From Dimorphilus gyrociliatus (taxonomy: Eukaryota > Animalia > Annelida): DNA of 64,000 nucleotides. A program made the position numbers and the translations under genes. This document shows positions 13,301-39,200 of this stretch, in pieces. The notes below the pieces were generated by a model, which ran no database searches, was not told where the DNA came from, and worked only from the letters and a program-made list of their open reading frames with translations. The stretch's first letter is position 1. Each line of letters begins with the position of its first letter. The stretch lies in assembly GCA_904063045.1 (NCBI GenBank), contig CAJFCJ010000008.1, positions 868,001-932,000 of the forward strand, written 5' to 3'.

Positions 13301-16300
13301 TACTGGTTGTTTTTAAGGCAAATGTTAATAGTTTAACATTCCTATATAGGCAGTCCAGGTGCTGTTGGTGCTGCTGGAGTTCAAGGTCCAAGAGGACCAC
13401 AAGGGCCTCCCGGTTCAATTGGGCAACCTGGCGATATTGGACCAGTAGGTCCAAATGGAAATAAAGGCCCAAAAGGTTCTCAGGGCCCTAGAGGAGATAA
13501 TGGGGTACAGGGACCAAATGGAATTAAGGGTATTGCTGGACCAAATGGTGATATAGGAGCACAAGGTGCTAGAGGAGGAATTGGTCCTATTGGCCCATTG
13601 GGAGACAAGGGAGTAGCAGGACCTCCAGGACAAGAAGGACCTAAAGGAGATGTTGGAAATGCTGGTCCAATGGGACCAGATGGACAAGTCGGTCCGAAAG
13701 GTGCCAAAGGTGGTGTTGGAGATCAAGGCCCTAAGGGAAAACAAGGTACTCAAGGCGGTGTTGGTCAACAAGGAAAGAAGGGAGAACTTGGAGCTGCTGG
13801 GCCTTTGGGACCTCAAGGAGACAAGGGGGTCGTTGGAATAAAGGGAATTGTGGGACAGAAAGGTTTAGTTGGTGATCAGGGTATTAGAGGAGTGCCAGGA
13901 GTCCTTGGTCCGAAAGGTTCCAAGGGTGCCAAAGGTGGTCAAGGTGCCCAGGGTCAACCTGGTAATCAAGGTGCTCAAGGAGCTCAAGGTGTTATTGGAA
14001 ACACAGGAGCATCTGGACCAGAAGGGTTAACTGGTTTAGATGGGCCGCCTGGCCCCCCTGGTGCTCAAGGTTTACCAGGACCACAAGGGTCAGTAGGACC
14101 AAGGGGTGATACTGGACCTGATGGTATCATTGGTAGACTTGGCCCACAGGGAAGTATCGGTGCCCCAGGTCTAAAAGGACCTAAAGGTGATCAAGGAAAC
14201 CCCGGACAGGCAGGTGTCCAAGGAGATTCAGGACCACAGGGTCTTAAAGGAGATGTGGGAGATCAAGGAATAGCTGGACCAGCTGGCGAAAAAGGAGCCA
14301 AAGGTTAGTCAGCTTAAATCCTACAAAATCAATAATCTGTTATTTTTTACAAGGCGTCAAGGGTGAAGTTGGAAGTCAAGGTGCTACTGGTATGCAGGGA
14401 CAAATTGGTATAGATGGACAGCAGGGTGCTCAAGGCGCTAAAGGATTAGCTGGAGGCGAGGGTCCCAAAGGTTATGTCGGTAGATCAGGACCAACAGGTC
14501 CTCAAGGAAATAAGGTAACATTGTAGATTCTTAAACAACGAAAAGATTATAATTTTCGGGTTTCAATATATAAATAGCTTCAATTATATAAATAGACTAC
14601 CATAGTATTTATAATTTCAATTTCATGCAGGGTACCAAAGGGCAGCCAGGATCTAATGGTATTTCTGGAGATGTAGGACCTCAGGGTCCACAAGGACCTA
14701 AAGGAGCAAAGGGTGTGGCTGGACCTGCTGGAGCCACTGGAGATCCAGGCTTGCCAGGCAATTCTGGTCCTCAGGGAGGTGTTGGCAACAAAGGTAATAT
14801 TGGAATCAAAGGAATCAAAGGTCAAAGGGGACGAGCAGGAGAGCGCGGTGATTCAGGTAAGTTGCGCTATAGACGATAGACTTTGACTGTAACCGACATC
14901 CCACATCATAGGCGACCAGGGAGCTACAGGTGATCAAGGTTTGTCTGGATTAGCTGGTGCACAAGGTCCAGTTGGACCAGCTGGGCCAGATGGTGATACT
15001 GGAGACGCTGGAGAGATCGGTAACAAAGGTAGCAGAGGATTACCTGGTCCAGAAGGTGTTGTCGGCCCTAAAGGCATTGCAGGTGACAATGGAGGTGCAG
15101 GACCGCAAGGACCACAAGGGGCAAGAGGAGATCCTGGAGAAGCGGGTCCGATTGGATCAACTGGAGCGCCTGGTGAACCAGGCGTACAAGGAAGAATTGG
15201 ACCAGTTGGACTACGGGGTGATTCCGGTAAATCTGGACAACCTGGACCGGCAGGATCTGCTGGTCCCAGAGGTATTATATAAATTTTTACTGAGAAAACA
15301 CTAATTTACACACCGATCATTTATAGGATTACCTGGAGTACAAGGACCTCAAGGAGGAAAAGGAATCAAGGGTATTAGAGGGCCGAAAGGACGCCAAGGA
15401 GAAGAAGGACCACGCGGAAACGATGGTCCGGAAGGTTCACGAGGTGCCCAAGGAGAAAGTGGGCCTCCAGGAGCCCGAGGTGGTCAAGGTCCTAGAGGTG
15501 ATACTGGTGATATTGGTCCTGCAGGAGAAAAAGGTGATGATGGCTTAGTGGGATTGGATGGCCCAATAGGTAGAGTTGGTGATCGTGGTCCTAGAGGTCC
15601 AGATGGACCTAGAGGCCCAGACGGTAGGCCCGGTAGTATCGGCTTACGAGGACAGATTGGAAATCCTGGTAAAAAAGGAGCAAAAGGACCCCAAGGCGAT
15701 CCTGGAGATCCAGGTCAGCCAGGCCCAGATGGACAGCAGGGTGGAACTGGATACACAGGCCGTTCTGGTGTTGGTGGATCTGTTGGTCAACAGGGAGTTA
15801 TTGGTGGAACTGGAAACGAAGGTCCCGTAGGCCCCCGAGGTTTACAGGGAGCTCCAGGACCCCAAGGTCCGCCTGGTGCAACCGGTCCTAGAGGTGATGC
15901 AGGTGTTGCTGGTTTACAAGGTTGGTTGAGAAATTATATCTCTCTGTATTATAAACGAAATTCAAAATTCTAGGTTCTCCTGGAAACCAAGGACCTCCAG
16001 GTCCCACGGGTCCTGTAGGCGAAATTGGAGACTTAGGTCTTCCTGGACCAAAAGGAGCCAGGGGAGATGCAGGTTTTCCAGGTTTACCTGGAGAACAGGG
16101 TCCAGCTGCATCTGGAGCTGGAAGACCAGGTCCCGTCGGCTCTCCTGGTCTACCAGGTCCTCTGGGAGTTGATGAGTGTTTGGTAAACAATGGAGGTTGT
16201 CAACACGTTTGTGTCAATACATATGATGGATACTGCTGTATGTGTAACGAAGGATTCCAACTTGTGCCGGTTGCCCAAGAAGTGACGAACTGTGTTATTC

Positions 16301-17065
16301 AAGATGTTACTTGCAGAGAAACCCAAACGGCAGCGAGACAATGTTTCTGTCAGCTAAGAGACGCAAACGGAAATCCAACGAGACAACTTCCAATTAATGG
16401 AACAACATGCACTGATATTGATGAATGTTCAAATTCAAATGGTCTATGCGAACACAATTGCCAAAATACAAGAGGATCATACCAGTGCACTTGCAATCAA
16501 GGTTTTGCGTTGCATCCAAACAAAAAAGACTGTCAAGGTAAGGAGTGTTTGATAATTAAAATATTTTCTAAATTGACAAACGCGTGTCTTGAAAACTTCA
16601 GATGTTGATGAATGTGCTACGCCAAATATTTGTGGATCAAACAAAGTCTGCTCAAACACATTAGGAGGCTACCTCTGTGGCGATAGCAGTTTGTACCAAA
16701 GTAAATTGAACAACAATTTTTCATGACTATGTTTTTCTTTCTGCACAGATATTCTAATCCGAAGAGTCGCTGCTGCTGCTGCTGCAGCAAGAGAAGATGA
16801 TCAAGAAGATGAAGATGCCAGCTCAACAGTTTCATCTACCTCTTCAACGACAACTGTCCTAGCAGCTGTTCTAAGCGGCTTGTTGGCAGTCATTTTCACT
16901 GTAATAATTGTCATAGCCTATGGAACTTGGAAGAAACGTAAGAGCCGTGGCACAGGTGATGTAGAGACTTCATCCAGTCATAGTGCTAAAACGCTCGCTT
17001 CGAGTCGCCTAAATCTGGGAATATTCGGAGGTGATTCAACCGAACGACCTGCTCATTTCGTATAA
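10333..17065 (+). CDS. Collagen A: type I transmembrane EGF-collagen, about 1913 aa
   Basis: ATG at 10333 followed directly by an intron; signal peptide [21 protein letters not shown]; CYKDGAIC cap; Gly-X-Y exons 10745-16164; EGF units 16165-16700; [25 protein letters not shown] then KKRK; stop 17065. All introns frame-consistent. Confidence 0.9.
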
Positions 17066-17762
17066 TAATAAATAGATGAAAAGAAATCAGAGGAAAAAGA
17101 AACAACCTTTTTTTCCTCCTTTATAAAGCAAGAATATCAATAAATCTACATTTTATCTAGAGGAAAAAAGCCTTTTCGGTTTTTTTTTAACTTCCGGATT
17201 TTAGGTTCCTTTTTATGTGCAATCGAACTTAGTTAATTAAAAAAAATGAAGCCTAAGAATTTGTGTTGCTTTCATGTTTTTTTTCCAGCCTGAAGAATGT
17301 GCTTATTTTTTTCTTTGAATGAAAGAGTTTCGTAATAAAATGTAAACAATAGTGTGTAAAACTACCTTGTTTATGTCTGGCGTTTATGTATAAGTGTATT
17401 AGCATAAATGATATACAACGTTTACTTAGTTGGAAAAATAAAATAGAACAAAAGTAATAAAAATTTTGATGATTCCATTTAAAAGAGAATTTATTACTTT
17501 TAATATAAACTGAATAATCTTATCTTTTCTTTATGTATATGAAAAAAAACATTAATTACCAGTTAATTAGCTAAAGTCGGGAAAGAGATATTTTGTCTAA
17601 GTTCCACTCAAATATGATAAAAAAGATGGAGGAGGATAAGATAAACGAAAAAAACATTGCACATTCTTTCTTTTTTAAAAACAAAAATGTCTCTTTATTT
17701 AAATGTTTATGTATGCGAATTAACCCGTCTTCTCGGGTTTTCCAACCTCCTAAGCTTTATTT

Positions 17763-20700
17763 CTATGTAAAAGTTGGCGGCCGTACTGTCGTATGACGTT
17801 TTGAGAAAGTTCCATCAGAACCCACTGATGAGATAACAGATTCTGCATCGCTTGATTCTGTTGAAGTTTTCTGCCATCTCTTTCGGACAAGAACCACAGC
17901 TAAAGTTAAAAGGGCACAGCCAGCAGCTGAGAGCAATGAAGCTAAGATAACTGTATTGGTAGACGACGATGATGAGGCAATTACTTGACCAGGATTACCT
18001 CCCTGTGCAGCAGCCCTTGCCTGATTAGATGATCTAAACTCAAGGTCACCTAAAAAATTAAATTTTATTAGTAAAAGTTAGTTTGAGTAGATAAGACATA
18101 CCTTCGCTATGACAGAAATATGCTCCATATGTATTGACACAAGTTGAGAATCCTTGTCTCAGACATATTTGAGTGTCTTCGCATTCATTCACATCCACAC
18201 AAGATCTACCATTCGCGCTCAATCTAAATCCTCTTCTAGTATCACAAGAGCACGTGAAACTACCAACAGTGTTGGTGCATTGGTCCTCACAAGGTTTTCC
18301 TTCATCGCATTCATTTATATCTAAAAATAAATAGTTATTCTATAAGAATAAGTCTTTTTGGAAACAATTTGAATTGATTACCTTCGCATTTATATCCAGT
18401 TACTTGGAGAATATTTGAGGTTCCTTCTTGAGTACATTGACAAGATCTTTGATTATTAATATAACTGCATCGAACTGTTCCAGCTTTACAAGAGGCAGCG
18501 CCTTGAGGAGTGGGGATAAGGCGATAACCAGGTCTACAAAGACAGCAGTATCCGTCGTAAGTATCATAACAGATATGTTCACATCCATGATTGTCGTTCA
18601 AGCATTCGTTAACTCCTGTTAATTTTAAATGTTCTATACATGAACCTATTATTGAGAAATATATAATTACCGAAGTATCCAGGTGATCCTCTTGGTCCCA
18701 TTGGACCTGGTGGTCCAATTTCTGAGCCTGGCGGACCTCGGGGGCCCTGTTGACCATTTGGCCCTCTTCTTCCTTTGTTCCCAGCCGGACCTTGAGGGCC
18801 TTGTGGGCCTTTTTGTCCAGGATCTCCTGGTGGACCTGGAGGTCCATCTATGCCTTTCTCGCCATTAAGTCCAGCTGGACCTGAGGGGCCAACTGGACCA
18901 GCATCTCCGGCTTCTCCTGGTGGACCGTCTGGTCCATCTTCTCCTCTTGATCCTGCTTGTCCTGTATAACCTTGCATTCCTGTAGCTCCTTGTTGTCCAA
19001 CGAGACCGCCAGTACCGTCTTGACCCTGAGAACCTCGTGGTCCAGTTGCTCCTTGCATGCCAAATGGCCCATTTGGACCTTTGTCTCCGACACCCCCAGA
19101 CAAACCATCAGGACCTGGAGCACCTTTACTTCCTTGTTGTCCTATATCTCCAGCCTGCCCAATCCTTCCAGGTAAGCCTTGTGAACCCATGGGACCAGTG
19201 GAACCTTGAGGACCTTGTAATCCCGTTCGGCCGCGGCGACCTTGTGGTCCTTTAGGACCTTGTAGGCCAGTTGCACCCTTGGCTCCCTTTGAACCAACTG
19301 GACCGGGTGATCCAGCAGGACCTGTCGCACCCGGAGAACCAGCTCCTCCTGGTAAGCCGTCAGGTCCAGCATCTCCAGGATCACCAAGTTCTCCTTGATC
19401 ACCTGCAATTCCTTGAGGTCCTTGTAAACCAACAGGACCTTGTGGTCCTCTGACACCTTGTGGCCCTTCATCACCCTGAGGTCCTGGGGGACCATCGGGT
19501 CCTTCTGCTCCTTTTTCGCCCACTGGACCAGTTGGTCCTATAAGAACATTTTTTGATATTTTATTGCTTGAGAAAACTAAAACTACAAGTGACTTTACCT
19601 TGCAGACCAGGCAATCCCTTGTCACCATCTAAACCAGGTAAACCTGTCGCTCCCTGTTCACCTTGAGGTCCTTGAGGACCAGGATTACCAGCTTGTCCAA
19701 CCAAACCTTTAGCGCCTTGAATACCAGTGGCACCTTGTGACCCTCTAGAACCAGTATTACCAGGGGGTCCTTTCATTCCCGGATAACCTTTCGGGCCTTT
19801 ATCTCCAACGGCCCCGATTGGCCCAACAACTCCGGGCTGACCAACAGAACCATCTGGTCCCTTTTCTCCAACGACTCCTTTTGCGCCCTTTATTCCCCTA
19901 GCACCATCTTGGCCTCTTGCTCCTTGAGCTCCTTGTGGGCCTTGAGCTCCTATTTGTCCTTCACCACCGAGAGGCCCTTTGTCACCAGCAGGGCCCTTAA
20001 GACCGGGATCTCCTTGAGGACCATCTTGTCCGACTTGACCTTCTGGTCCAGCCGTTCCGATCGGACCTGGAATAACGTAAAAATAAAGTAAGTTTATATG
20101 TTCAGAAACAACGCTTTTTAGTTTACCTTTCGGTCCGGTTGCTCCAAGTAAACCTGTTTGGCCAGCAGGACCAGGATCACCGATTGGCCCAATACCACCT
20201 ACAGCACCACGATTACCAACAGGTCCGGTTATACCAGTGTCACCAACAGGTCCCAAAACTCCTTGTTCACCAGTGTTACCTACGGGTCCTGGATCTCCAG
20301 TTGCTCCAATACCTCCTTGTATTCCTATATTTTCAATGTTCCATATAAATTTCTTAGTATCTTAATAAGACAAAACTCACCAATGTCGCCTGTATCTCCA
20401 GGTAAACCTACAGCTCCCTGGACTCCTTTAACTCCAGGTTGTCCTGCATCACCGATTGGGCCTTTAGGACCTCTCGGCCCATCTACTCCTTTCTGTCCTT
20501 TATCTCCCTGAGGTCCAGCATCTCCTGTATTTCCTTCTAATCCTGGAGGTCCTCTCTGGCCAACTTGGCCAGGAGCACCTTTTCCGCCAGTTGTACCAAC
20601 AGCTCCCACAGGTCCATCACCGCCAGCAACACCTGGTGCTCCTTTTGATCCTCTAGGACCAGGTGCTCCTTCTGCTCCATCTAAACCAGTCGATCCAGTC

Positions 20701-23700
20701 GCACCAGGATCACCAATTGCTCCGGCTGGACCTTTTTCTCCTTGTATTCCAACTTGACCAGGTTGTCCTCTTGGTCCAGTTGCTCCTTGTCCTCCTTGAT
20801 CGCCTTGGGGCCCCTAAAAAACTTAAATATGAAAGTGATGCTTTATGAATCAGATATCTTAAATACCTGATTTCCTGGTTCTCCTTGAGGACCTTGATCG
20901 CCAGTGTTACCTTGAGGTCCCTTCGGTCCCGTTCCACCCTGAAGTCCTGCCTGACCTTGCGGACCATCGGGTCCTTGAGCTCCAACAACTCCGTCGTCTC
21001 CTACAGCACCTGCTGGACCTTGGGCACCTTGAGGGCCTTGACTACCGGTATTACCAGCCGGTCCAGGAGGACCATCAGGGCCTTTATCTCCTGCATCTCC
21101 AATGGGTCCTTCAGATCCTTGTTGACCTTGTGGACCTTTAGAACCCGGTGGTCCCTGATCGCCTGGAGTACCTGGATCGCCTATTGCGCCTTTTGGTCCA
21201 GTAGCTCCCTGGAGTCCTTGTGCACCGGGATCACCTGTTATAGAGTTTAACACATGGAATCAGCTTCTAGAATTTATTCTGACATATAATTAATTTTATA
21301 TTTTCCTTAAACGATCTATATTAAATTCAAACTCATTTGTTAAATACTCCTAAGTATGTAAATTACAATAATTATAACAATAAAAAACTTTACCAATAGG
21401 TCCTTGAGCTCCAGGGTTACCAGGTATGCCAATATCTCCCTGTGGGCCAGCGCCACCTTGCTGCCCTTTCTGACCAGCTGGTCCAGAGTTTCCAGGAGGT
21501 CCAACGTCTCCAGGTATTCCTGGTGGTCCTGGATTTCCATTGCTGCCAGCCTCTCCCGGATTACCTAATACAAATAATTAAAATAATTTTCTCTATTCTT
21601 ATTATTACTTTACCTTTTGGTCCTGCTTGTCCTATGTTACCCTGTGGGCCTCTTGGCCCTGTTGCACCTTGTACTCCATCTGGTCCTTTAGGTCCAGGAT
21701 CGCCAGTTGCTCCTTGAGCTCCTGGAGGCCCAGCCGCTCCAGCTGGACCTTGACTTCCCTGTGAACCCTGATTTCCAACCGCTCCGTCGTTACCAGGCGA
21801 GCCTATTTTGTAGGTTAGAATAGAAATTTTATAATTTTTGAAGAATAACGTTGTTCACTTTCAAATCTTACCAGCTGGTCCTATATTTCCTGTTGCACCA
21901 GGATTACCAGCATCTCCAACTGGCCCTATGGGTCCAGGAGGACCTTGACTTCCTGGGGAACCTTTGTTGCCTGCAGGGCCTACAGGACCTTGATCGCCGA
22001 TGGCTCCATCTTGACCGGCTGCTCCTACGTCGCCTGGAGGTCCTACTGGTCCTTGAGGACCTGGTAAACCCTGAGGTCCTTTCACACCATCAGGTCCTGT
22101 AAAACCTGTTGCGCCTATTTTTCCAGATACTCCTGGCTGACCTTGAGGACCATCTTGTCCATTGGCTCCCTTTGCACCAGCCTCGCCTATTTGATAAAAT
22201 AACGATAATTTAAAGTAAAATTTTATTTTGTTAGGCAACCTTTTGCCCCATCTGGTCCAGCAGGTCCCAAGTCTCCCTGAGGTCCTTTGGGTCCAGCATT
22301 TCCTTGAGGTCCAACAGGTCCTTTGTCTCCTGGATCACCTACTTTTCCAGGTGGCCCTTTCGGTCCTTTCGGTCCTGCTGCGCCTTTATCACCATCAGGT
22401 CCAGCATCTCCAACTGGTCCTGGTCCTCCGGGCGGTCCCACAGGGCCAGGTTGACCTTTTGGTCCTGCATCTCCATCAGGTCCGTTTGCTCCAATAGCGC
22501 CTCTGGCACCCTGTGCCCCTTGAGGGCCTTTTTGACCCTGAGGACCAACACCTCCAGTATTTCCAATAGGGCCGACTGATCCAGGATTGCCTTTTAAGCC
22601 TTGATCTCCATTGGGCCCTACAGCCCCTGGAGGACCTTTGTCTCCTTGTGGGCCAACAACTCCCTTTTGTCCTTTGGCACCTTTGTCTCCATTAGCACCT
22701 TTATTACCCTTGTCTCCATCAGGTCCTTGGTCTCCCTGCAGTCCATCAGGACCCTTTCCTCCAACATCGCCTAAGTTAACATTTTTAACTTATAGCTTAA
22801 AATAGAGTTATAAGTATTTATCATACCTTGTGCTCCAGGTACTCCAGTTGCTCCTTTGGCTCCATCATTTCCATCAGGACCCTGTTTTCCTGGTTGACCG
22901 ACTTTGCCTTGAGGGCCTTTATCACCTGTATCGCCTTGTGGTCCGACCGGACCTACGGGTCCTGGAATACCTGGCTTACCAGCTGGTCCTTGGGGTCCTT
23001 TATTTCCGGCATCCCCTTGACTTCCAGCAGGTCCTTGAGAGCCAGGATCTCCAGTTGCACCAGTAGCACCAATTTCTCCATCAGATCCTGTACTTCCAAC
23101 GTCACCATTTGGTCCAGGGTTTCCTTGAGGTCCAGTGTTTCCTTGCGGACCTATAGCTCCAGGGTCCCCTGCAGGTCCTTGCAGTCCAGCGCTACCATCA
23201 TTTCCTTGGTTTCCAATTGGACCTGAAGCACCAGTATCTCCAGGTGGTCCTTGAGGACCTTGACTGCCACCATTTCCTTCAGGGCCTTTATCTCCAGGAT
23301 TACCATCCGGACCAGTTGCACCTCGGGGACCTTGAGGTCCTTGTAGCCCTTTTAAAGGTAGACTAAACTGGTTTTTAATGCGAATATAGTAATTTTAATT
23401 ACATTACCCTTTGGTCCAGCAACGCCTTTATCGCCAGGAGAACCTTGATCTCCCTGGAGACCGTTGTCACCTTGCACACCATCATTTCCAGGCATTCCCT
23501 TTTCACCAACAATTCCTTTTTCTCCTTTTACACCTTGATCACCAGGCTCACCTCCTAAGCCTTGCGGACCTTGAGCACCTATGTTGCCTTTTGTTCCTTT
23601 ATTACCTTGAAGGCCTATATTTCCTCGGGCCCCCTGTGGACCGGGCGGACCCTTATCTCCTTGAGGGCCAGGCGGTCCAGCATCTCCAGGATTACCTGGG

Positions 23701-24754
23701 GCACCAGGGGGTCCGTCTTGGCCTTTTCCACCTAATAATTTGAGCATAGTCAAAAACCTATCTTATAATGAAAAAATTTCGCATTTACCAGGTGGGCCAT
23801 CTGCTCCCGCATTGCCACTTAATCCTGGTCTTCCTCTGTTTCCTTGGCGACCAGGTGGACCTGCTTGACCGTCTGGACCTTTGGCACCTTGTTCCCCTGC
23901 TGGTCCTTGTTGACCAGGTGCTCCAGGTTGGCCTATTATGCGTATAATAATTCGATTATCATTGAAGGATAAAAATAATAGACTTAATTTCTACCTGGGT
24001 TACCAAGAGGTCCTTCATTTCCCGCTATTCCTTGAGGGCCTCTATCTCCAGGAGGCCCGTTTAATCCTTTAGGACCTACAGGACCTTCAGGTCCTGATGT
24101 GCCTATCGGTCCGTCTCTACCTCTAGGACCGCCTGGTCCCTTAGGGCCTTTTGCTCCATTAGGTCCTGGGTCTCCAACTGGCCCCCTTCCTCCAGGTGGA
24201 CCCTGGATTCCAGGAGGCCCATCAGGTCCCCCTGTTCCTGGTGGACCAGGAGGTCCAGGGGGTCCTGGACGAGTATTTACTCCTATGAAAAGAAATTTGC
24301 GTAAGATAAAATAGTTTTAGGAAAAACGAAAGTTACCAGATCCTTCAAAGCAAACACCTCCTTCGTTATTACATCTGACATTAACGCCATTAGATTCTTG
24401 TCCGCTTCCTATAATTCAAATGAATTAATGTAATCAAAAAGTGTTTGTAAAATTAGCATATTCATAAAGGAAAACTAGCAAACCTGTTTGTAAAATATAT
24501 ATCACAACTATCCAGGACGCTGCGACTCTACCAAAACGGCGCGCCTAAAAAAGGAATAACAAAGGTTTATTTAATAAAAAGTTCGATGTAGTTAAGCCAG
24601 ACATATTATATATCTATTGCTATGTTTAACTACAAATACCAGGCATTAACCTTTGAATTAATCAAATATCATTGGTTTAAATAAACAAATTAATTGAACA
24701 ATTTGTTTTTGTCATATAACATTAACTATACAAGATAATAGCACTTACCATCAT
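17763..24754 (-). CDS. Collagen B: type I transmembrane EGF-collagen
   Basis: ATGATG at 24754-24749 then intron; signal peptide [26 protein letters not shown]; CNNEGGVC cap; Gly-X-Y 24282-18672; EGF units; [24 protein letters not shown] then RKR; ends PPTFT* at 17763. Confidence 0.9.
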
Positions 24755-28400: not shown

Positions 28401-31400
28401 AGCCTGGTTGACCAGTTGCTCCTTGACCACCAACTGGACCACGAGAGCCGGCAGGTCCAGGGTCTCCTTGAACGCCAGCATCACCAACAACACCACGATC
28501 TCCATTAACGCCTTCGGGACCTACTTGACCTTTATCACCTTCAGCACCCTTATCTCCTATAGGTCCCTGATCTCCTGCTATACCAGGAACTCCTATGTAC
28601 AATAAAAGTTAAACTTAAAGATTTTCAAAAATGTTGTATTTCAAAATATCCTACCAATTGCTCCAGCAGGTCCTTGTTCACCAGTGAAACCATTACTTCC
28701 TGGTAGACCTTGAGGTCCAGGATTTCCTTGAAGGCCTTTAGGACCAACTTCTCCTGTATCTCCAGCCCCACCATTAGCACCAACGGGACCTTGAGATCCA
28801 GCTGTTCCCATTTCTCCTGATAAGCCTTTAACACCTTTTGGACCTTTGTCACCAGCCTCTCCTATATTGATAAAAATTGAAGATTTTTTTTATACACTAT
28901 ATATGAAGAATTATAATAAAGTCGAACACTTATCTCAAAATAGCATATTCAACTAAATAATGAAAGCAAATGAAATGAGCTTACCTTGTTTTCCTCTGTC
29001 ACCAGCAGGCCCTATTTGGCCTTTTGAACCTTTACCGCCTTGCGCGCCAGGATCTCCAGGAGCTCCAATTTGACCCTGAAGTCCTTGAGCACCCTTTGCA
29101 CCGATATCACCATCTACTCCTTTTTCTCCAGCAGGTCCTTTGGGTCCAGGGTTACCGACTGGACCATCTGGTCCAGGAAGTCCGTCTGCACCTTGAATTC
29201 CGTTTATTCCCTTTTCTCCAGGATTACCAACTTTTCCAGGTTCTCCAGCAGATCCTTGTGGACCCTATTAGAATATTTCTTTATCCTTGTATATCATTTT
29301 AAAGCATAAAATACTTACAGGAGATCCTTGACTGCCTGGATTGCCCTGAATTCCAGGTGGTCCTGCATTACCAGGCAGGCCAACTGCACCAGCTGGACCT
29401 ATCTTTCCTTTATTTCCATCTGGACCGATAGGACCTTGAATACCTTGGTCACCTGGCGGACCAGGGTTTCCGTTAGCTCCAGGACTACCAGGAGCACCTT
29501 GATCTCCAGGTATACCAGCCTCACCACCCGCACCGCCTGGTCCTATGGGTCCTTTCGGACCTGCAGGACCTGGGTCACCAACAGCTCCACCAGCTCCAGG
29601 TGTGCCTGCTCTTCCTGCAGGTCCAACTTTTCCCTTATCACCATTTCGACCATTATCTCCAGGTGGGCCTTTCGCTCCTTGGCTTCCAATCGTTCCTGGA
29701 TCTCCAACATCTCCACTCTGTCCTGGCAATCCTTGTAAGCCAGTTGCACCTTGTAATCCAAATCTACCTGGCGATCCGGCATCCCCAGTGAAACCAGGGT
29801 TACCTGGTGCTCCGGGCAGGCCTTGTGGTCCTGGACTACCTGCTCCACCTTGCGCTCCTTTATCACCTGGTGATCCAGCTACCCCATTTGGGCCAGTAGC
29901 TAAAAACAGGCGCTATGACTCACTTATATTTGTTATCCTTTGTAAACTCACCTCCTTGAGGACCCTTAGCACCTCCGGTTCCTTCAGGGCCTACATTTCC
30001 AATTGGCCCCTGAACACCTGGTTCTCCTTTTATACCTGGTGCACCTTTTTCTCCTGCGGGACCTGCATCTCCCTGGGGTCCGTCAAGTCCTTGAGGACCA
30101 GCGGGACCCTTAGAACCAGCTGGTCCAGGGTCTCCTATATCTCCAGCGGGACCAACACTTCCTGTATCGCCTTCTGAACCGGGCAGTCCGTCTGGGCCAG
30201 GAGAGCCTTGATCCCCCGCATCCCCAGTGTCTCCCTGTAGACCTTTGGGACCAGCAAGTCCTTGGCCTCCCTGAGGTCCTTGATTTCCAGTGTCTCCCAT
30301 TGGTCCAGGATCCCCAACAGCACCTTTCTGGCCATCTATTCCCTTTGGCCCTTTAGCTCCAGGAGCACCTTTAGAGCCAGCATCCCCTAGATCTCCTGGC
30401 TCACCTATTTAACAAATAATGTAAATGAAGCAAACTTTTTTATGAGAATTTTCATCATAAAAAGTAATAAAAAGTTTTTATTACCAATTGGACCATTTGG
30501 TCCAGGAGCACCACCTGCTCCATCACTTCCTGGGGGTCCATCTATTCCTATATCACCTGTATCCCCTTCTGAACCCTTCGGTCCCTTTTCTCCTGGTAGA
30601 CCTGGGTCGCCTTGAGGACCAGTAGCTCCCTAGATATAAATATAATTACAAAGTCTTAAAATAAGAACTTTAGATTTTTTTACCTGTTGACCTTGTTGAC
30701 CTGGGTCACCATTAGGGCCAGGTAAACCTTTTGACCCAGCTGGTCCTGGATCGCCATTAGACCCAATTGGACCAAACTCTCCTGGATCTCCATTCTTTCC
30801 AGGTGCACCGCTTGCTCCTTGTGTACCAATCGGTCCTATATCTCCATTTGGCCCAATAGGACCGGTGTTTCCCATATTTCCTTTTGGCCCATCTGGGCCG
30901 GTAAATCCAGGATCCCCTACATAAATTATATTTATTTAGGCTTATTTCTAATATTAATCTCTTCTAACCTGGTTGTCCTGGTGGACCATCACTTCCAACG
31001 TTGCCTTTTGGACCAGGAGGTCCAGACATACCAGTAAATCCTTGATCACCTCTGTTGCCATTGATTCCTGGTGAACCTCTACTTCCTTCAGAACCAACGT
31101 CACCAGGCGCACCTTAAAACAAGAAGAGTTGTAGGACTATATTCAATCGAAATATTCACATACCTGGTGGGCCACGGAAACCAATTTCTCCTTTATCACC
31201 TACTGTTCCTTTTGGTCCCACAGATCCTTTTGGACCATCTTCTCCTTTGGGTCCCTGTGGTCCTTGATCTCCTGTATTTCCAGCTGGGCCTGGTGGTCCT
31301 TTGTCTCCACTCTGTCCGGGCTGCCCCTGTGCACCATTAATTCCACTTTCTCCTTGAAGCCCTCTATTTCCTTGTGGCCCTTGATCCCCTTGAGGTCCTC

Positions 31401-32274
31401 GAATACCATTAGGACCTTTTATTCCAGTTGGTCCTTTCGGTCCTATACTTCCAATGTCCCCAGGTTGACCAGCTGAGCCTGGTGGACCTACAAAAAATAT
31501 CAATTAAGAAAATTAATAAATTGTCATATTGCATATAATCATGAAATTCTGGTTCAAGTAGATTACCTTGCTGACCGTCAGCACCAGCTGGCCCTTTATC
31601 ACCAGGATCGCCAACCATTCCTTGTGGACCTCTTGGTCCTTGTAAACCAGGGGAACCATTTTGACCTACACCTCCTTTATTTCCAGTAGCTCCCTGAGAT
31701 CCACGAGGACCAGGATTTCCTTGTCGCCCAATATTTCCTACTGGACCTTGAGGTCCAACTGGGCCTTTGGGACCAGGTTTTCCAAAGTTACCAGAACGAC
31801 CAGGAGGTCCTGTTCCACCTGGATTCCCTTGGTCACCTGGGGGACCTTCTCGTCCCTCCGGACCTGCAGGTCCGGGTGGGCCCTGATTGCCTTTGGGGCC
31901 GATAACACCTCTTGGACCGATTCGGCCAGGAGATCCGGAAGAGCCGGTCGCACCTGGAAGACCTGCTGGCCCCGGTGGCCCAGGAACTCCTCTCAGACCT
32001 TGAAATAGAAATCAGTACTTATTGAAAATAATTTATTTTATTTAGGTGATTACCCGTTCCTTCCATACACAGACCGCCTTCCTTACATTCTGTATTTTGA
32101 TCACCTCCAACACCTCTGGCGGAATTCTGACAAAATGCTACAATAATAATAAAAGAAGAAAATTAAACGAGAGGTAACACAAAAGAAAGATTTGTTTGTA
32201 GAAGAAATTAGCATACCTTTGCTAACGAACAGCAAAAAAATAACAATCGGTAAAACGCTGAGCCTTTTTTCCAT
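25417..32274 (-). CDS. Collagen C: type I transmembrane EGF-collagen
   Basis: Signal peptide [23 protein letters not shown]; CKEGGLC cap; Gly-X-Y 31998-26309; EGF units; [22 protein letters not shown] then RHIIKKRRK; stop 25417. Confidence 0.9.
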
Positions 32275-33247
32275 CTGATATCAATAGAAATTATGAAATA
32301 ACACTGCAGTCGAATATGAAAAGTATTAGTTGTAAAATGAAATCGAAGTTATATTCTATAACATGTCTTCTCTTTAATACTTGGTTTTTTTTTAACATAC
32401 CAATATAACTTATAATAAATTGAATGAAAATAAAGGCTTTTCTATATTTTAATTGATAATTTTTGTTCTAATGCTTACCTTTAGTTTATTATAAGGCTAT
32501 GCAGCGTTAAAATTTCCTTCAATCCTGCCCTGGGAACGTTACTGCCCAGCTGCAGAGATGGAAAATTTTTTATAATTGTCCGCCTTAAAGCATATACAGC
32601 ACAAGCACAGTCCTTAGAGCGGCGCTGTCCTCCACAGTTGACTGCACTTTGAATCCTTATGATTAAAAAATGATCCGAAAGAGCTGTCTGATCTTTCATA
32701 CCGTCTCCAACGCTAACACTTTTACCGCCACGCGTTTTTAGAGCGGTTTATTTTGAAATACTTTTATTAAACTTTTTATGCTAACTCCCTGCACTTGCTT
32801 TCCCAATAAGAAATTACCATAGAAACATATGCAAATTAATTAATAAAAATTAATTCAATAGCTAAAATCTCGCTTAAAGATTTTAAAACTAAATAATATC
32901 TGTATTTATAAAGCATTTATTTTCAACTACTCCCCCTAGTGCGAAAATCAAATTCAACCAAGCTGAACACTCAAAGTGGATGTGGTAAAATCAACGTCCT
33001 ATATGCTTTTCTGTGACACCGAATAGTTTTCTCCAGAGATAGTGTGAGTGAGAGGGTTAGTAAAGTTTTCGTATGATCATTTCAACTTACTATCTTCAAT
33101 TACAAATTAAAGATAGTTTAAAGAAAATAATGCAGTGTTATAGCAATATTGCACAGTTGTAACAAAACAATTTGCAAAGTTACTCTAATGGCATTTTATT
33201 TATTTATTTAAAAACGATTATTTAATCATTACTATTCAAACAGGGCA
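32275..33247. promoter_or_regulatory. Bidirectional promoter / 5' leader region shared by collagens C and D
   Basis: Head-to-head ATGs 973 bp apart. Each start codon lies just downstream of an acceptor (C: TCAG/ATG; D: ACAG/GGCAATG) with upstream donors near 32478 (-) and 33045 (+), implying 5' UTR exons and a core of a few hundred bp. Confidence 0.6.
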
Positions 33248-36200
33248 ATGCTGAAGGTCCTTGCACTATTTTACATTTTCTCTGGAGTAAACTGGAGTAA
33301 GTATCTTATTTTTCCTTTAACGTTTTATCAATTCTTGTAGTAACGCATTTATATGCAAATATCTGCATATATGCTTTATCATCTTTTAAATATATTGATA
33401 ATTTTAAACCATCTTATTTATCGAATATCGTATTTATTGACCAAAATAAAAGAAATTTTGACAACTTTATTGATGTTCTCATAGTTTTACAAAAAAGAAC
33501 TTTTTCTTCTTTAGGTCTGGCTTTTTTTCTTGTGAAATTTTTTTTACAGCCTTTTTTTATATACAATTTTTAATATTCTTTTTTTAAACCAATAGTTTAC
33601 GCTCAGCAAAATGTTGGGGAAGGGCGAGGCGGTGACCAGACTGTAAAATGCAAAAAAGGAGGATTTTGTTATGATGGCACAGGTAGTCTATCAGACATTT
33701 ACCCTTTTAAACTCTTTCATCTATATTTTTCTTCACGATAATTTTCAGGCCAAAGAGGAGCTCCAGGTTTACCAGGGCCTGTGGGACCCCCAGGGGAGAC
33801 TGGTCCTGTAGGGGATAGAGGTATCGTAGGGCAAAAGGGTGTTCTTGGACCTAAAGGAGACAATGGCCCTCCAGGTAATTAATTACTCAAAAACAAACCC
33901 AATACACTGAAACATACGATTTTATTCTGTAGGTCCAGACGGAAACTATGGACCACAAGGTCCAGTAGGAGATACTGGTCCTCCTGGTTTTACGGGATCT
34001 GCAGGTCCACCAGGCCAGAGAGGTCCAATTGGATCTAAAGGCCCCCGTGGTATTCAAGGAGATAGGGGAAGAATAGGTCTAGCAGGTTTGGCTGGACCTG
34101 GTGGTCCCCAGGGGCCAGCTGGTAAAAAAGGTACCAAAGGAGTTGCTGGAGGACCTGGAGATTTCGGTCCACCAGGCTTACCTGGGGAAGACGGAGACAG
34201 GGGTGATAGAGGCCCTGTAGGAAATACAGGATTAGAAGGTATACATTTATTTTTCAGATATTAGATTTACGCTTTCTTAAAATTATGAAAAGGTCCAAGA
34301 GGGTTACCAGGCGATCGTGGGAGTAATGGTGATAAAGGTCCCCAAGGAGCTGAAGGCATTAAAGGAGCTCCTGGATCTCAAGGAGTGGCAGGAGAGTCTG
34401 GTCCTGTTGGGGAAAAGGGGACTAACGGTACAGATGGTCTACCAGGTGCAATTGGAAGAGATGGACCAGTAGGAGATAAAGGAGATCGCGGCCCACAGGT
34501 AAAAATACTTTGTTCATTTTTATAGTCAATAAAAAAAGGTATTTTAGGGGAAAATAGGAGAAAAAGGCCTCAAAGGATTACTGGGCTCTACAGGACCAAA
34601 GGGAGATAATGGCCCAAAAGGAATTATTGGTATGAAAGGAGAAAAGGGTTTCCGTGGTCCTTTAGGCGAACCAGGATCAGTCGGTAATCCAGGAATTGAT
34701 GGTCAACAAGGATTTAATGGGGGTCAGGGGTTACAAGGTTCAACAGGAGATACTGGGGGTATAGGACCCAAAGGAAACCCTGGTCCTGTTGGTAGTCAAG
34801 GATTACAAGGTGATTCTGGACCCGTTGGTCCAGCCGGGCCAAAGGGTTTACCTGGGAGCACAGGTGTACAAGGACCAGGAGGCAGTCCAGGACCACAAGG
34901 GGATAAAGGAGAAAAAGGTTTTCCTTAATCTGGCAAAGTTTCTGTTACTAATTGATTTTTGAACTCTAGGTTCTGTTGGTCTTCGTGGCATACCAGGAAA
35001 TATAGGAGTAATCGGTCTTAAAGGAAGTAATGGAAACCCTGGTATAAATGGACTGTCCGGCCCTGGAGGTGATCCAGGTGAAATAGGACCTCAGGGCAGT
35101 ACAGGACCTGAAGGAGATCCGGGAGTACCTGGTGTTAAAGGTTCAGCCGGAGGGCTTGGCGATACAGGTGATATTGGTCTAGATGGACCAATGGGAAAAA
35201 ATGGAACGATTGGTCCTGACGGAGATACTGGACCAAGAGGTACATTTTTGTCAACTATGATTCTTAATTTAACTATTTATATTAAATTCAGGTCCTGTCG
35301 GCGATGTTGGGGATCGAGGAAGTAAAGGGCCCGTAGGTAGTAAAGGACCACAGGGATTTGATGGATTAAAAGGAGATGCAGGAGAAAGGGGGTTTACAGG
35401 GCCGGACGGTCCTAAAGGACCAGTAGGCAAAGCTGGCGCTCAAGGTCTTCAAGGTAATAGAGGGAATGCTGGTGATGTTGGTGACACAGGCCCGCCAGGA
35501 GAAATCGGTTTAGTTGGAGGGCTAGGAGCAACTGGAGAAAAAGGACCTATTGGAGATCCCGGGGAGGCAGGAGTACCTGGTGGAAAGGGAATGAATGGAG
35601 AACCTGGACCAGACGGGCCGCAAGGCGATGCAGGTCAACTTGGTGAAAAGGGTGTTATAGGTCCAAAAGGAGATCAAGGATCCACAGGTCCTGCTGGAGC
35701 CATTGGAGTAGAAGGTGCTAAAGGCAACAAAGGGCCTCTTGGTCAGCAAGGAGTCATGGGAGATTTTGGACAACCTGGAGATAAAGGTGATATCGGTAGT
35801 AATGGTCTGCCTGGCAATAAGGGACAAGTTGGCGCCGCCGGACCAGCCGGGCCTATAGGAGATATTGGATCTCCTGGCGATGCAGGACCCGATGGATCAA
35901 TAGGATTAGATGGACGACAGGGTTCACCTGGAGACGCAGGAGGACCAGGTCCCCCCGGAATTCAAGGAGTTAAAGGCGTGAGAGGAGACTTTGGTTCTCG
36001 AGGAAATCCCGGTCCTGCAGGACCAAATGGTAATATAGGCCAAAATGGTCGTGTTGGCGATGTTGGTGATGTTGGAGTTGCTGGAGCTAAGGGAGCTCTA
36101 GGATCTGCTGGAGAAAAGGGAGCTGATGGGCCCATTGGTAACCCTGGAATCAATGGTGTTCAAGGACCTCGCGGTAAGCCAGGTCCAATTGGAGATCAAG

Positions 36201-39200
36201 GTGATACTGGGTTAGCAGGTGTAGATGGTGTAGTGGGGCCTTTGGGACCTCAAGGGCCTCAGGGAATTCCAGGGCTTGTAGGAGGTGTTGGTTTGGCAGG
36301 TCTACCAGGACTGCAAGGGCCAAGAGTAAGATCTGATAGTCCGTTTTAAGGAATCTTACTAATATTCCTCTTTTCAGGGTGATACTGGTGCTTCCGGAGC
36401 TCCTGGTCAATCAGGAGGCCAAGGCATACAAGGTGCCCAAGGTCAACCTGGGAGCGATGGACCCATGGGATCAACGGGTGTAAGAGGTCCTGTAGGGCCT
36501 GTTGGGTCTCAAGGTAGTAAAGGCTCAAATGGTGATTCTGGACCAAGAGGTATAAAAGGTATTCAAGGAAATGTTGGTTCTCCTGGAGATTCAGGTCCAA
36601 AAGGGCCGGCTGGTAATAAAGGGTTAAAGGGTCAACCAGGACAACAAGGATCTAGTGGAAGAAAAGGAGATATCGGAAATCCTGTATGATTCTTAATTTT
36701 TCTTGTCTTTTGTATTCATGTTTAACTGAGAAATTTTTTATTAGGGACCAAAAGGGCTTCAAGGTGAAAAGGGAGTTGGCAATCTAGTAGGAAAAACAGG
36801 TCCCCAGGGAAATCCGGGCGATATTGGAACTAAAGGACAGAAAGGTCAGAGAGGAGATAAAGGCTTACCAGGTAATGTGGGATCGAGAGGCGACACTGGT
36901 GGCCAAGGACCTGATGGACCTCTTGGCATTAAGGGTTTACGGGGTGATGAAGGTGGTGTTGGCGACAAGGGCCCTGTTGGAGAAAAAGGATCTCTTGGCC
37001 CATTAGGGCTTCCTGGAAAAAGGTAAAAAACTTTTTTTTGCATCAAAGTTTAATGTGTATTTATGTTTTTCAGAGGTCAACAAGGAGATGTAGGAGATCA
37101 AGGGGTTCTAGGGCCTGCAGGTAACAAAGGCAGCCCGGGGATTTCTGGAATCCCAGGAGTAAGAGGTTATACCGGACAACACGGGCCAGCTGGACCTAAT
37201 GGAAGAGCTGGACCTGCCGGTCCTGTTGGTTCTCAAGGTAATACTGGCGCACCAGGTAATGTGGGAGATAAAGGGCCACCAGGAAATACTGGAGCACCTG
37301 GACCACAAGGTCCTAAAGGCATTTCAGGTCCTATAGGCCCTTTAGGTGACCAAGGAGCTGTTGGGTCGAAGGGAAGTATAGGAAGTAAAGGTCAATCAGG
37401 TATACAAGGAGTAAATGGTGAAGCTGGGTATACTGGTTCTACTGGTCAAAAAGGTTCACGAGGTAATAAAATTCTGTTGGCATTAGCGAAAATATTTATA
37501 AATTTTTCTTATTTAGGTGATCAAGGGCCTGTTGGGGAAAGGGGTCCTAATGGCAATATTGGTCCACAAGGTTTTACTGGTAATACTGGGTCAAAAGGTA
37601 TTCAAGGATTAGTTGGTCAAAAAGGAAGCCAAGGACTTGTTGGAGAACCTGGCTCAAAAGGTCCTCAAGGTCCTCAGGGTAATCAAGGAGATGTCGGACC
37701 AATTGGAAATCCTGGGCAACAGGGCCGACCAGGAGGACCTGGTTTGCGAGGAAATACTGGTGATAGAGGAGATATTGGAATAACTGGAGCGAAAGGACCA
37801 ATTGGTAACAGAGGTCTGCCAGGCAGTCAAGTAAGCTTTATAGTCAAGAGATCATTTTCTTTCATTTTAATTATTTTGTATTTCTTTTAATCGACTTTAG
37901 GGAGATCCAGGAGAACAAGGAGACTCTGGTGGAATTGGAGATCCTGGTGACCCTGGTCCTAATGGAGAGGCAGGAAAACAGGGTCCTCAGGGCAGCCAAG
38001 GAGCAACAGGAAATACTGGTGTTCAGGGCAGAACAGGATTCACTGGTGCACAAGGATCCAGAGGCTCTCCTGGTGCTACGGGGGGAAGAGGTCCTGACGG
38101 AGATATTGGAGAAGACGGCATTGTTGGACCTCAAGGACCAGCTGGTGATAGAGGCAGAGACGGCTCAAAAGGCTCTGTTGGTCTTAAAGGAGAAATTGGT
38201 GTCATTGGTGGCCGAGGCCCTGCTGGTTCTAGAGGTCCACTGGGGAACACAGGAAATCCAGGCCCTGTTGGGCTCAAAGGAGATCAAGGACCTATCGGAC
38301 CGGAGGGTCCCCCTGGTGATACAGGGCCTATTGGAAGAGAGGGGTTAGTAGGAAGATCAGGAGTACCTGGTGTTCAAGGTGACATCGGGGGTACAGGTTT
38401 TCAAGGAGAAAAAGGAAGAGTGGGACCTCGAGGTTTTATAGGCCCACTTGGTGCTACAGGAGAAAGAGGCATCAAAGGAATAATTGGTTTACAAGGATTA
38501 AAGGGTCAAATTGGTGCTCGAGGTCAAAGAGGACCTGCTGGAATAAAGGGCAATGATGGTCAAAACGGTGGGTTAGGAAATCCTGGCCGAGAGGGGCAGG
38601 TTGGTCCGCCTGGTTTAATAGGACCACAAGGTAAAAAATGATAAATAAATATTATCTTAAATATTCTTACGAATATTTTGAAGGCTTTACTGGACCGAAA
38701 GGACGCGCTGGTCCGAGAGGTGTGAGAGGAAATAGAGGTTCTGTCGGCGACAAAGGAGATGCTGGAAATCCAGGGCAAGCAGGGCCGATAGGAAATCCGG
38801 GAAGTCCTGGAGTTCTAGGAGTTCGCGGGCCACCTGGACCACAAGGATTTACAGGTTCTAATGGTCCTGTTGGGGCGACTGGTGGAACAGGTGGAACAGG
38901 GAACACAGGTCTTACTGGCCTTCCTGGATTACATGGTCCCAGAGGATCTATTGGACCAAAAGGCGATGCTGGTCGCCCTGGAGATACTGGCTCCGTTGGG
39001 CCTCTTGGTAATAATCTTTATCTTATTGATATCACTCCAGTCGATAGAATTTAATTTAGATATTTCATCACTCAGGTTCTAGAGGGTCACCGGGTTCTAA
39101 CGGAGCTCGAGGACCAACAGGACAGAGGGGAGAACCTGGAGACGATGGAGAAGAGGGTCCAATGGGTAAGCAAGGTCCAGCTGGAGACCCAGGAGGTCAG

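What the first reader, a model, noticed from the sequence alone, without database searches (positions are those of the whole stretch)
16108..39194. A +1 register stutter exactly five triplets before the helix end in every chain
A: [22 protein letters not shown] (16108-16119). B: [19 protein letters not shown] (18717-18719). C: [19 protein letters not shown] (26354-26356). D: [19 protein letters not shown] (39192-39194). Each insertion equals 1 mod 3 and is followed by five mostly Pro-rich triplets and then G-x-[ND]-E-C. A positionally conserved imperfection suggests a hinge, a protease-accessible site for releasing the helix, or a nucleation segment that sets chain stagger (inference).
Basis: seen in the sequence. 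Interest (0 to 1): 0.7.

Follow-up and report, generated by a model that had tools for sequence, protein, structure and literature searches.

The report
One conserved break near helix end
Four neighbouring genes of a small marine worm (two shown expressed) encode very long membrane-anchored collagens whose near-perfect 1,600-residue triple helix has one register-shifting flaw, always five Gly-X-Y triplets before its end; the short proline-rich end piece after the flaw is the best-conserved helix stretch and probably starts folding, with the flaw as a joint (untested).

Summary
The window holds four collagen genes: A (+), B (-), C (-) and D (+). Each encodes a signal peptide, a short C-x5-C N-peptide, about 530 Gly-X-Y triplets, three EGF-type modules, a transmembrane segment and a short tail.

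In each chain the only register-shifting flaw lies at the stated coordinates. It is 4 residues in A and 1 residue in B, C and D. Five triplets follow, then G-x-[ND]-E-C, which is the first strand of an LDL-receptor EGF-A-like calcium-binding EGF domain.

Spliced RNA contigs carry the flaw in A and B. A related species keeps it in its A orthologue.

The paralogues' helices have diverged almost to randomness (X/Y identity 9-13%, C-D 26%). The five-triplet end piece keeps 45% identity, more than any of 522 other windows, and is proline-rich.

Two closer relatives from metagenomes have a G-x-G break followed by five triplets. More distant relatives place breaks elsewhere or have none. So the position is conserved in this subfamily only, and the "+1" register class is not conserved.

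Most likely reading: a folding nucleus plus a flexible joint. A protease site or a neutral relic is not excluded.

The scan noted this cluster and other C-terminally anchored collagens of this genome before, but not the break.

The parts
10492..17065 (+). Gene A, whole coding span: signal peptide, C-x5-C N-peptide, helix, EGF modules, TM segment, tail. 13 introns.
   Evidence: The 3' half is confirmed by spliced contigs (joints 15920/15974, 16535-37/16600, 16688/16749).
10745..16107 (+). A main helix: 529 triplets including one in-register PAA at 10762-10770. Includes a GC-AG intron at 12080-12136.
16108..16119 (+). A break: four residues, A-S-G-A.
   Evidence: Present in RNA contigs of X1 and X2 and in a contig of X3.
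16120..16164 (+). A terminal five-triplet module ([15 protein letters not shown]).
16165..16535 (+). A: last helix Gly, which is also the first residue of EGF1 (G-V-D-E-C), then EGF1, a 4-Cys middle module with an N-G-T sequon, and cbEGF2.
   Evidence: Pfam FXa_inhibition, EGF_CA and cEGF. LDLR EGF-A/B match, E = 5.9e-15. Family alignment A2.
16856..16930 (+). A transmembrane segment, followed by K-K-R-K and a 44-residue tail.
   Evidence: Reading of the ORF. Hydrophobic run plus positive-inside residues, by inspection only.
18720..24265 (-). B main helix, 528 triplets, no interruption.
18717..18719 (-). B break: one residue, I.
   Evidence: Covered by spliced contigs of X1 and X2.
18672..18716 (-). 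B terminal five-triplet module ([15 protein letters not shown]). The next Gly codon is split by intron 18615-18669.
   Evidence: Joint 18614/18670 seen in X1 and X2.
17763..18614 (-). B: EGF1, middle module, cbEGF2, cbEGF3, TM segment, tail and stop codon.
   Evidence: Joints 18320/18382 and 18047/18100.
26357..31999 (-). C main helix, 530 triplets.
26354..26356 (-). C break: one residue, G.
26309..26353 (-). C terminal five-triplet module ([15 protein letters not shown]), then G-V-N-E-C from 26308.
33748..39191 (+). D main helix, 530 triplets, with one in-register non-Gly triplet NLV at 36781-36789.
39192..39194 (+). D break: one residue, G.
39195..39239 (+). D terminal five-triplet module ([15 protein letters not shown]), then G-A-N-E-C from 39240.

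Best explanation
Shown:
- Each chain's collagenous domain is split by one inherited micro-interruption.
- On one side is a rod of about 530 triplets (about 455 nm).
- On the other is a 15-residue, proline-rich 'junction helix' with pattern G-x-P G-P-x G-x-x G-x-P G-x-x, capped by aromatic or hydrophobic residues.
- The junction helix runs without any linker into a calcium-binding EGF domain, followed by further EGF modules and a C-terminal membrane anchor.

Inferred:
- The three chains are brought together at the membrane by their C-terminal parts.
- The junction helix next to EGF1 is the nucleus from which the triple helix zips towards the N-terminus, where the C-x5-C knot locks it.
- The aromatic cap plus the calcium site of EGF1 makes that junction stiff.
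- The interruption five triplets up is then the one flexible joint. It lets the long rod swing away from the membrane-proximal stalk.

The selected unit is the module plus an imperfection at its N-terminal edge. A particular inserted residue or a particular register shift is not what is selected.
For: - The break is the only register-shifting flaw in about 530 triplets in all four chains.
- It is present in spliced RNA contigs for A and B.
- It is kept in the A orthologue of a related species, whose helix X/Y identity to A is only 67%.
- The paralogue helices are near random identity: 9-13% X/Y, C-D 26%, against a random expectation of 9.9%.
- The five-triplet module has 45% identity, above all 522 main-helix windows, whose maximum is 37%.
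- The module carries 4-6 Pro in 10 X/Y places, against a mean of 1.8-2.4 in main-helix windows.
- EGF1 begins at the last helix Gly and matches LDLR EGF-A at E = 5.9e-15.
- Two closer metagenome relatives (L010, L014) have G-A-G or G-V-G followed by exactly five triplets with the same G-x-P G-P-x start. The five triplets sit in their own mini-exon.
- The C-terminal anchor and N-terminal Cys pair are present in all four chains.
- From established knowledge, recalled and not tested here: Pro-rich C-terminal triplets nucleate C-to-N folding of fibrillar collagens, and single G-x-G breaks give the bend in collectin and C1q stalks.
Against: - There is no structural, biochemical or genetic test.
- A break right beside the nucleus should slow propagation. 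This is recalled from osteogenesis imperfecta work.
- The inserted residues vary: ASGA, ASGP, I, G, G.
- The register class differs between this cluster (+1) and L010/L014 (-1).
- Wider family members put their last break 7-13 triplets from the end, or have none in the last 50 triplets. Hence the device is not universal for the family.
- Persistence could simply reflect the rarity of the exact deletion needed to heal the break.
- The splice of the L010/L014 mini-exon is predicted only. An internal CCAG acceptor 15 nt downstream would give an unbroken helix.
Confidence: 0.4

Rival explanations
1. Tolerated relic. The break marks an old module or exon junction between a short EGF-linked collagen stalk and the long rod. 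It is harmless because it lies so near the end, and it persists only because healing it needs a precise indel.
For: - In L010 and L014 the break sits exactly at the 5' edge of a mini-exon that encodes the five triplets.
- The inserted residues are not conserved.
- Break length has changed between lineages (1, 4 and 2 residues) without an obvious rule.
- Distant relatives vary freely.
Against: - Every other position of four 1,600-residue helices is kept free of register-shifting breaks while X/Y residues are randomised. Selection on helix continuity is therefore intense.
- Despite several length changes at this spot, none of the sampled lineages has restored perfect register. The number of independent events is small, and chance alone gives roughly 0.3-0.45.
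Confidence: 0.25
2. Protease-accessible site. The locally unwound helix is cut to release the rod from the membrane-bound EGF stalk.
For: - A membrane-anchored collagen that ends up in matrix must be shed.
- The ectodomains of A-D have no dibasic furin-type site outside folded EGF modules, by reading of the ORFs. Another cut site is therefore needed if they are shed.
- Helix breaks are generally protease-sensitive (recalled).
Against: - There is no conserved recognition sequence at the break.
- Relatives that do have clear processing sites (R-K-K-R-S and S-K-R-Q in L002, R-K-K-R-S in the L006 protein) carry them after EGF1, so EGF1 stays with the helix there.
- The strong conservation of the five triplets is not explained by a mere cut site.
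Confidence: 0.12
3. Register or chain-selection device. The extra residue or residues set the stagger of the three chains, or discriminate which of A-D can combine in a heterotrimer.
For: - In this cluster all break lengths are 1 mod 3, and A differs from B, C and D by exactly one triplet.
- There are four co-located chains. C and D lie head-to-head, as in collagen IV gene pairs.
- The distance from the last main-helix triplet to N-E-C is a multiple of three (18 or 21) in all seven sequences.
Against: - An equal insertion in all three chains does not change their mutual stagger.
- The -1 class in L010 and L014 shows that the shift itself is not conserved.
- Nothing is known about chain composition.
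- The multiple-of-three coincidence has a chance of about 1 in 9.
Confidence: 0.1
4. Artefact of assembly or of my gene models.
For: C and D were not checked against reads. The parsing in C and D is ambiguous by one triplet.
Against: - The breaks are whole-codon insertions inside long open exons, with the EGF domain in frame downstream.
- The A and B breaks are present in contigs of two or three separate runs without indels.
- A second species has the A break.
Confidence: 0.01

Closest known systems
EGF-domain collagens of the brachiopod Lingula anatina (shell-matrix collagens; Luo et al. 2015, PMC4595640; also PMC13425148)
   Same: A collagen triple helix is combined with EGF, EGF_CA and FXa_inhibition domains instead of a fibrillar C-propeptide. 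The genes are tandemly duplicated. The animal is a lophotrochozoan.
   Different: In what I read, those papers report no membrane anchor, helix length or helix imperfections. I could not fetch the sequences, so orthology and the presence of the break are untested.
Kink in collectin and C1q collagen stalks (single G-x-G type interruption in MBL, SP-A, C1q; recalled, not tested)
   Same: A single conserved interruption in an otherwise regular helix, close to globular C-terminal domains. It gives a bend.
   Different: Those stalks are 20-30 triplets long and secreted, with the break mid-stalk. Trimerisation is by a coiled-coil neck or a gC1q head. Here the break is +1 type, lies 5 triplets from the end of a 535-triplet helix, and the protein is membrane-anchored.
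C-terminal Pro-rich nucleation triplets of fibrillar procollagens (recalled)
   Same: A cluster of imino-acid-rich triplets at the C-terminal end next to the chain-association domain. Folding runs C to N.
   Different: Fibrillar chains have about 338 triplets, a COLFI propeptide, and no interruption between nucleus and rod.
Membrane collagens XIII/XXIII/XXV (MACITs, PMC4678570) and XVII
   Same: Collagens anchored in the plasma membrane. The helix nucleates next to the membrane. The ectodomain can be shed.
   Different: They have type II orientation (N-terminus inside), several long non-collagenous interruptions, furin site near the membrane, and no EGF modules.
CCBE1 (nearest clusters by language-model features, score 0.91)
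   Same: It combines calcium-binding EGF and collagen repeats.
   Different: The EGF modules lie N-terminal to two short collagen repeats. It is secreted and has no anchor. The resemblance is compositional only.
LDL receptor EGF-A/EGF-B pair (PDB 3bps, 1hj7)
   Same: EGF1 and cbEGF2 match at E = 5.9e-15. EGF-A also starts with G-T-N-E-C-L-D-N-N-G-G-C.
   Different: In these collagens a 4-Cys module is inserted between the two EGFs. The first Gly is shared with a triple helix.

Membership tests
Collagen (triple-helix repeat proteins) | Long uninterrupted Gly-X-Y repeat rich in Pro. | tested here: met
   526-531 consecutive triplets per chain. Pro is 24-32% at X and 13-18% at Y.
Fibrillar collagens (clades A-C) | C-terminal COLFI propeptide and a major helix of about 338 triplets. 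| tested here: not met
   Downstream exons give only EGF-type Pfam hits, followed by a TM segment. The helix has about 535 triplets.
Calcium-binding EGF domain | Six-Cys EGF with an N-terminal x-[DN]-E-C start and an internal [DN] and aromatic residue. | tested here: met
   FXa_inhibition E = 4e-16 and EGF_CA E = 6e-11 for A. LDLR EGF-A match. The first acidic residue of the consensus is replaced by the helix Gly, as in LDLR EGF-A.
Type I (C-terminally anchored) membrane protein | N-terminal signal peptide, and a single hydrophobic segment near the C-terminus followed by basic residues. | tested here: inconclusive
   Seen by inspection in all four chains. No topology predictor or experiment was run.
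MACIT / collagen XVII type membrane collagens | N-terminal cytosolic domain and signal-anchor (type II orientation). | tested here: not met
   The hydrophobic anchor is C-terminal. The N-terminus carries a cleavable-type signal.
Lingula-type EGF-domain collagens | A collagen helix joined to EGF, EGF_CA and FXa_inhibition domains in place of COLFI. | tested here: met
   The domain composition matches the description in PMC4595640. Common descent was not tested because no sequences could be fetched.
Collectin / C1q-type kink | A G-x-G interruption (one residue missing) in a short stalk. | tested here: not met
   B, C and D have one extra residue. A's four-residue insert can be read as A-S plus G-A-G, and its net shift is +1. 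L010 and L014 do have G-x-G. The analogy is functional, not membership.

The most novel reading that the evidence does not exclude
The break, the conserved (Gly-X-Y)5 module and the directly fused calcium-binding EGF together form a dedicated 'nucleate at the membrane, then bend' device of C-terminally anchored collagens. This class is scarcely described. The device would let 455-nm rods fold outward from the cell surface and then lie flat for assembly into the worm's matrix or cuticle.
Probability: 0.2. Interest if true: 0.65.

Novelty: new variant of a known kind. Interest (0 to 1): 0.48.

Why it matters
Helix interruptions are usually studied in collagens that have many of them (types IV, VII, FACITs), where the role of any single one is hard to isolate. 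Here the system has one interruption in 1,600 residues, at a fixed place, beside the most conserved stretch of the helix. There are four natural sequence variants and a relative of the opposite register class.

This makes the question of what one break does to folding, flexibility and cleavage directly testable with short constructs. It also bears on how a collagen anchored by its C-terminal end is folded and laid down. That orientation is the reverse of all well-studied membrane collagens.

Tried and rejected
- The exhaustive HMMER search with the A exon (break + EGF1 + EGF2) returned only multi-EGF proteins. None of the 150 listed has a collagen run.
- Word one search (150 aa) gave one true fragment (P0001) and one family fragment (P0019). 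The rest were SCUBE/fibulin-like.
- Word one search (L002, non-collagen part) gave EGF proteins and one family member with VWA inserts, P0187.
- Word search 3 (L006, junction region) was swamped by collagen VII and fibrillar collagens. No family member was found, and those hits were not used further.
- Because of the length filter, and because a spliced model may not be sent to the tools, full-length annotated orthologues (Capitella, Owenia, Lingula and others) could not be retrieved.
- Of the 80 loci from the metagenome scan, most are unrelated EGF arrays.
- L085 looks frameshifted. L038 is uninterpretable. L013, L015, L017, L019, L022 and L025 lack enough upstream sequence.
- Literature searches for a C-terminally anchored EGF collagen found nothing beyond the Lingula and chiton 'EGF-domain collagens'.
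- The Alvinella genome paper reports 8,000-residue annelid collagens but no domain detail.
- The idea that G-x-[ND]-E-C is a special helix terminator was rejected. It is the ordinary EGF-A start.
- The idea of a universal family-wide break position was rejected.
Full report
WHAT IS IN THE WINDOW

Bases 10.4-40.2 kb hold four eukaryotic collagen genes: A (+), B (-), C (-) and D (+). A and B are tail-to-tail. C and D are head-to-head. They stand out as four GC-rich blocks in AT-rich DNA.

Introns are 48-159 nt. Most lie in phase 1 inside a Gly codon. All are GT-AG except one GC-AG in A.

All four chains share one architecture:
- a signal peptide;
- an N-peptide of about 20 residues with C-x5-C;
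- about 530 Gly-X-Y triplets;
- the break;
- five more triplets;
- an EGF domain that starts at the last helix Gly;
- a 4-Cys module with an N-G-T sequon;
- two calcium-binding EGF domains;
- a Ser/Thr/Ala-rich linker;
- one hydrophobic segment followed by basic residues;
- a tail of 30-45 residues.

That is a collagen anchored by its C-terminal end.

I joined exons only inside scripts, to count triplets. All searches were run exon by exon by reference, and the joined-model search step was left out.

THE OBSERVATION

- A-S-G-A at 16108-16119;
- I at 18717-18719 (-);
- G at 26354-26356 (-);
- G at 39192-39194 (+).

Each break is followed by 15 residues of Gly-X-Y and then G-x-[ND]-E-C. In C and D the letters also allow the reading GGP/GGQ + P + four triplets.

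The unbroken runs before it are 526, 528, 530 and 530 triplets. The only other irregularities are in-register non-Gly triplets: NLV in D and PAA near the N-terminal end of A.

The distance from the second N-terminal Cys to the break is 1591, 1594, 1597 and 1597 residues. Rod length (about 455 nm) is therefore tightly kept.

EXPRESSION AND REALITY

One run on record as RNA (X1, a coral metatranscriptome) and one run of unrecorded type (X2) hold contigs that skip the predicted introns with GT-AG ends. The contigs run through the A and B breaks. No insertions or deletions were listed and no supported splice joint lies at the breaks; one depth-2.8 contig with a 21-letter side and 14 extra letters joins 18718 to 18826 and was discounted. 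The intron in B between G-Y-F-G and V-N-E-C is confirmed. A third run (X3) covers the A break. X1 and X3 carry an Ala-to-Pro difference in the codon just before the A break (16105 G>C) but the same break length.

CONSERVATION INSIDE THE CLUSTER

Ungapped X/Y identity between paralogue helices is 9-13%, and 26% for C-D. Random expectation from composition is 9.9%. The duplications are therefore old.

The five-triplet module has 45% mean pairwise X/Y identity. This exceeds every one of 522 main-helix windows, whose mean is 15% and maximum 37%.

The module has 4-6 Pro in its 10 X/Y places, against a window mean of 1.8-2.4. That puts it in the top 0-12% of windows in each chain. Its last triplet is F-F, Y-F or P-L.

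WHAT FOLLOWS THE HELIX

Pfam gives FXa_inhibition, EGF_CA and cEGF. The best solved relatives are the LDL-receptor EGF-A/EGF-B pair (E = 5.9e-15). EGF-A begins G-T-N-E-C-L-D-N-N-G-G-C.

G-x-[ND]-E-C is therefore the ordinary N-terminal strand of this kind of calcium-binding EGF. Its first Gly doubles as the last helix Gly, and there is no linker. From general knowledge of calcium-binding EGF arrays (recalled), such a junction with a preceding aromatic residue tends to be stiff.

RELATIVES

Related species. A fragment hit (P0001) led to a genomic contig, L001, from a related species. It carries the A orthologue. Identity is 91% in the EGF part and 67% X/Y identity in the last 64 helix residues. 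The break is kept as A-S-G-P, followed by five triplets and G-V-D-E-C.

Distant family members. They share the EGF1, 4-Cys module, cbEGF, cbEGF, TM layout (alignment A2, 33 invariant columns). They came from marine metatranscriptome and metagenome contigs: L002, L006 (which has VWA inserts), L008, L018, L020 and L052. Their helices have many interruptions, about one per 20-40 triplets. The last interruption differs from one to the next:
- L008: G-V-G, 7 triplets from the end.
- L002: G-F-G, then five triplets, then G-A-G.
- L006: G-V-G, 13 triplets from the end.
- L020 and L052: +2 breaks, 10-12 triplets from the end.
- L018: none in the last 50 triplets.

Closest EGF1 relatives. Two contig groups have the highest EGF1 identity to chain C (67-68%): L009/L010 and L013-L015. 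Upstream of a long intron they have a mini-exon that reads G-A-G or G-V-G, followed by exactly five triplets with the same G-x-P G-P-x pattern. Four non-helical residues then precede N-E-C. This splice is predicted only. An internal acceptor 15 nt downstream would remove the break. The upstream acceptor has the proper pyrimidine tract, and the 15 nt keep a collagen-like frame in both contigs.

Conclusion from relatives. An imperfection at the N-terminal edge of a conserved five-triplet module characterises this subfamily. The +1 class does not. The wider family has no fixed position.

HOW IT MOST LIKELY WORKS (inference)

The membrane anchor and EGF stalk bring three chains together. The Pro-rich module beside EGF1 nucleates the helix, which then zips towards the N-terminal Cys knot. 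The stiff EGF1 junction leaves the break as the one flexible point, so the 455-nm rod can swing away from the stalk. I give this 0.4.

The rivals are:
- a tolerated relic of a module junction (0.25);
- a protease-accessible release site (0.12), weakened because relatives carry dibasic sites after EGF1 rather than at the break;
- a register or chain-choice device (0.1);
- an artefact (0.01).

COMPARISON WITH WHAT IS KNOWN

The only published class with this domain mix that I found is the 'EGF-domain collagens' of Lingula shell matrix (PMC4595640; PMC13425148). In what I read, neither an anchor nor helix imperfections are described there.

Full-text searches for C-terminally anchored collagens found nothing. 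Language-model look-alikes are CCBE1 clusters, which have a different domain order. Described membrane collagens (MACITs, PMC4678570) have the opposite orientation.

LIMITS

- Other notes of this scan name the genome as the annelid Dimorphilus gyrociliatus. I did not test that. Short introns, AT-rich spacers and presence in an aquarium or coral metatranscriptome are merely compatible with it.
- Full-length annotated orthologues could not be retrieved.
- The taxa of the metagenome contigs are unknown.
- No function was tested.

Noticed in passing
window 10745-39191 (the four helices): Rod length is almost invariant: 1591, 1594, 1597 and 1597 residues from the second N-terminal Cys to the break. 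X/Y residues between A, B and C/D are at random-level identity. This suggests selection on length, like a molecular ruler.
   Followed up: partly
window 36781-36789 (+): Chain D has one in-register non-Gly triplet (N-L-V in place of G-x-y) in mid-helix. It is the only such triplet inside any of the four rods.
   Followed up: no
window 10762-10770 (+); N-termini of B, C and D near 24265, 31999 and 33748: The N-terminal helix ends are also irregular. A has GPP GSP P-A-A and then the helix. C and D start C-x-[ED]-G-T-G. B has G-S-G-V-N-T-R-P before its first GPP. All four have a C-x5-C pair in a separate small exon just before the helix.
   Followed up: partly
window 12080-12136 (+): GC-AG intron in gene A. 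It is the only non-GT donor among 48 helix introns modelled.
   Followed up: no
window 31999-33748: C and D are transcribed divergently from a shared region of about 1.7 kb. This resembles collagen IV gene pairs. A and B are convergent, with 3' ends less than 100 nt apart by the RNA contigs (17654 versus 17671).
   Followed up: no
window 16105: G>C difference in runs X1 and X3 changes Ala to Pro in the triplet just before the A break. Break length is unchanged.
   Followed up: no
L002:832-1248; L006:4216-6264: Distant family members carry furin-type sites (R-K-K-R-S, S-K-R-Q) between EGF1 and the 4-Cys module. One has VWA domains at the N-terminus and two more inserted after EGF1. The window's chains have neither.
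   Followed up: partly
window A-D, L001, L010, L014 (helix end to N-E-C): The number of residues from the last main-helix triplet to N-E-C is 18 or 21 in all seven sequences. It is always a multiple of three, although break type and post-helix linker differ. This is unexplained and may be chance (about 1 in 9).
   Followed up: no
window 3541-4035 (-); 40936-42174 (+): Neighbouring genes: an exon of an acetyl-CoA transporter (Acatn, E = 8e-43) and a long ORF with a weak Rrn7/TAF1B cyclin-domain hit below the Pfam cut-off.
   Followed up: no
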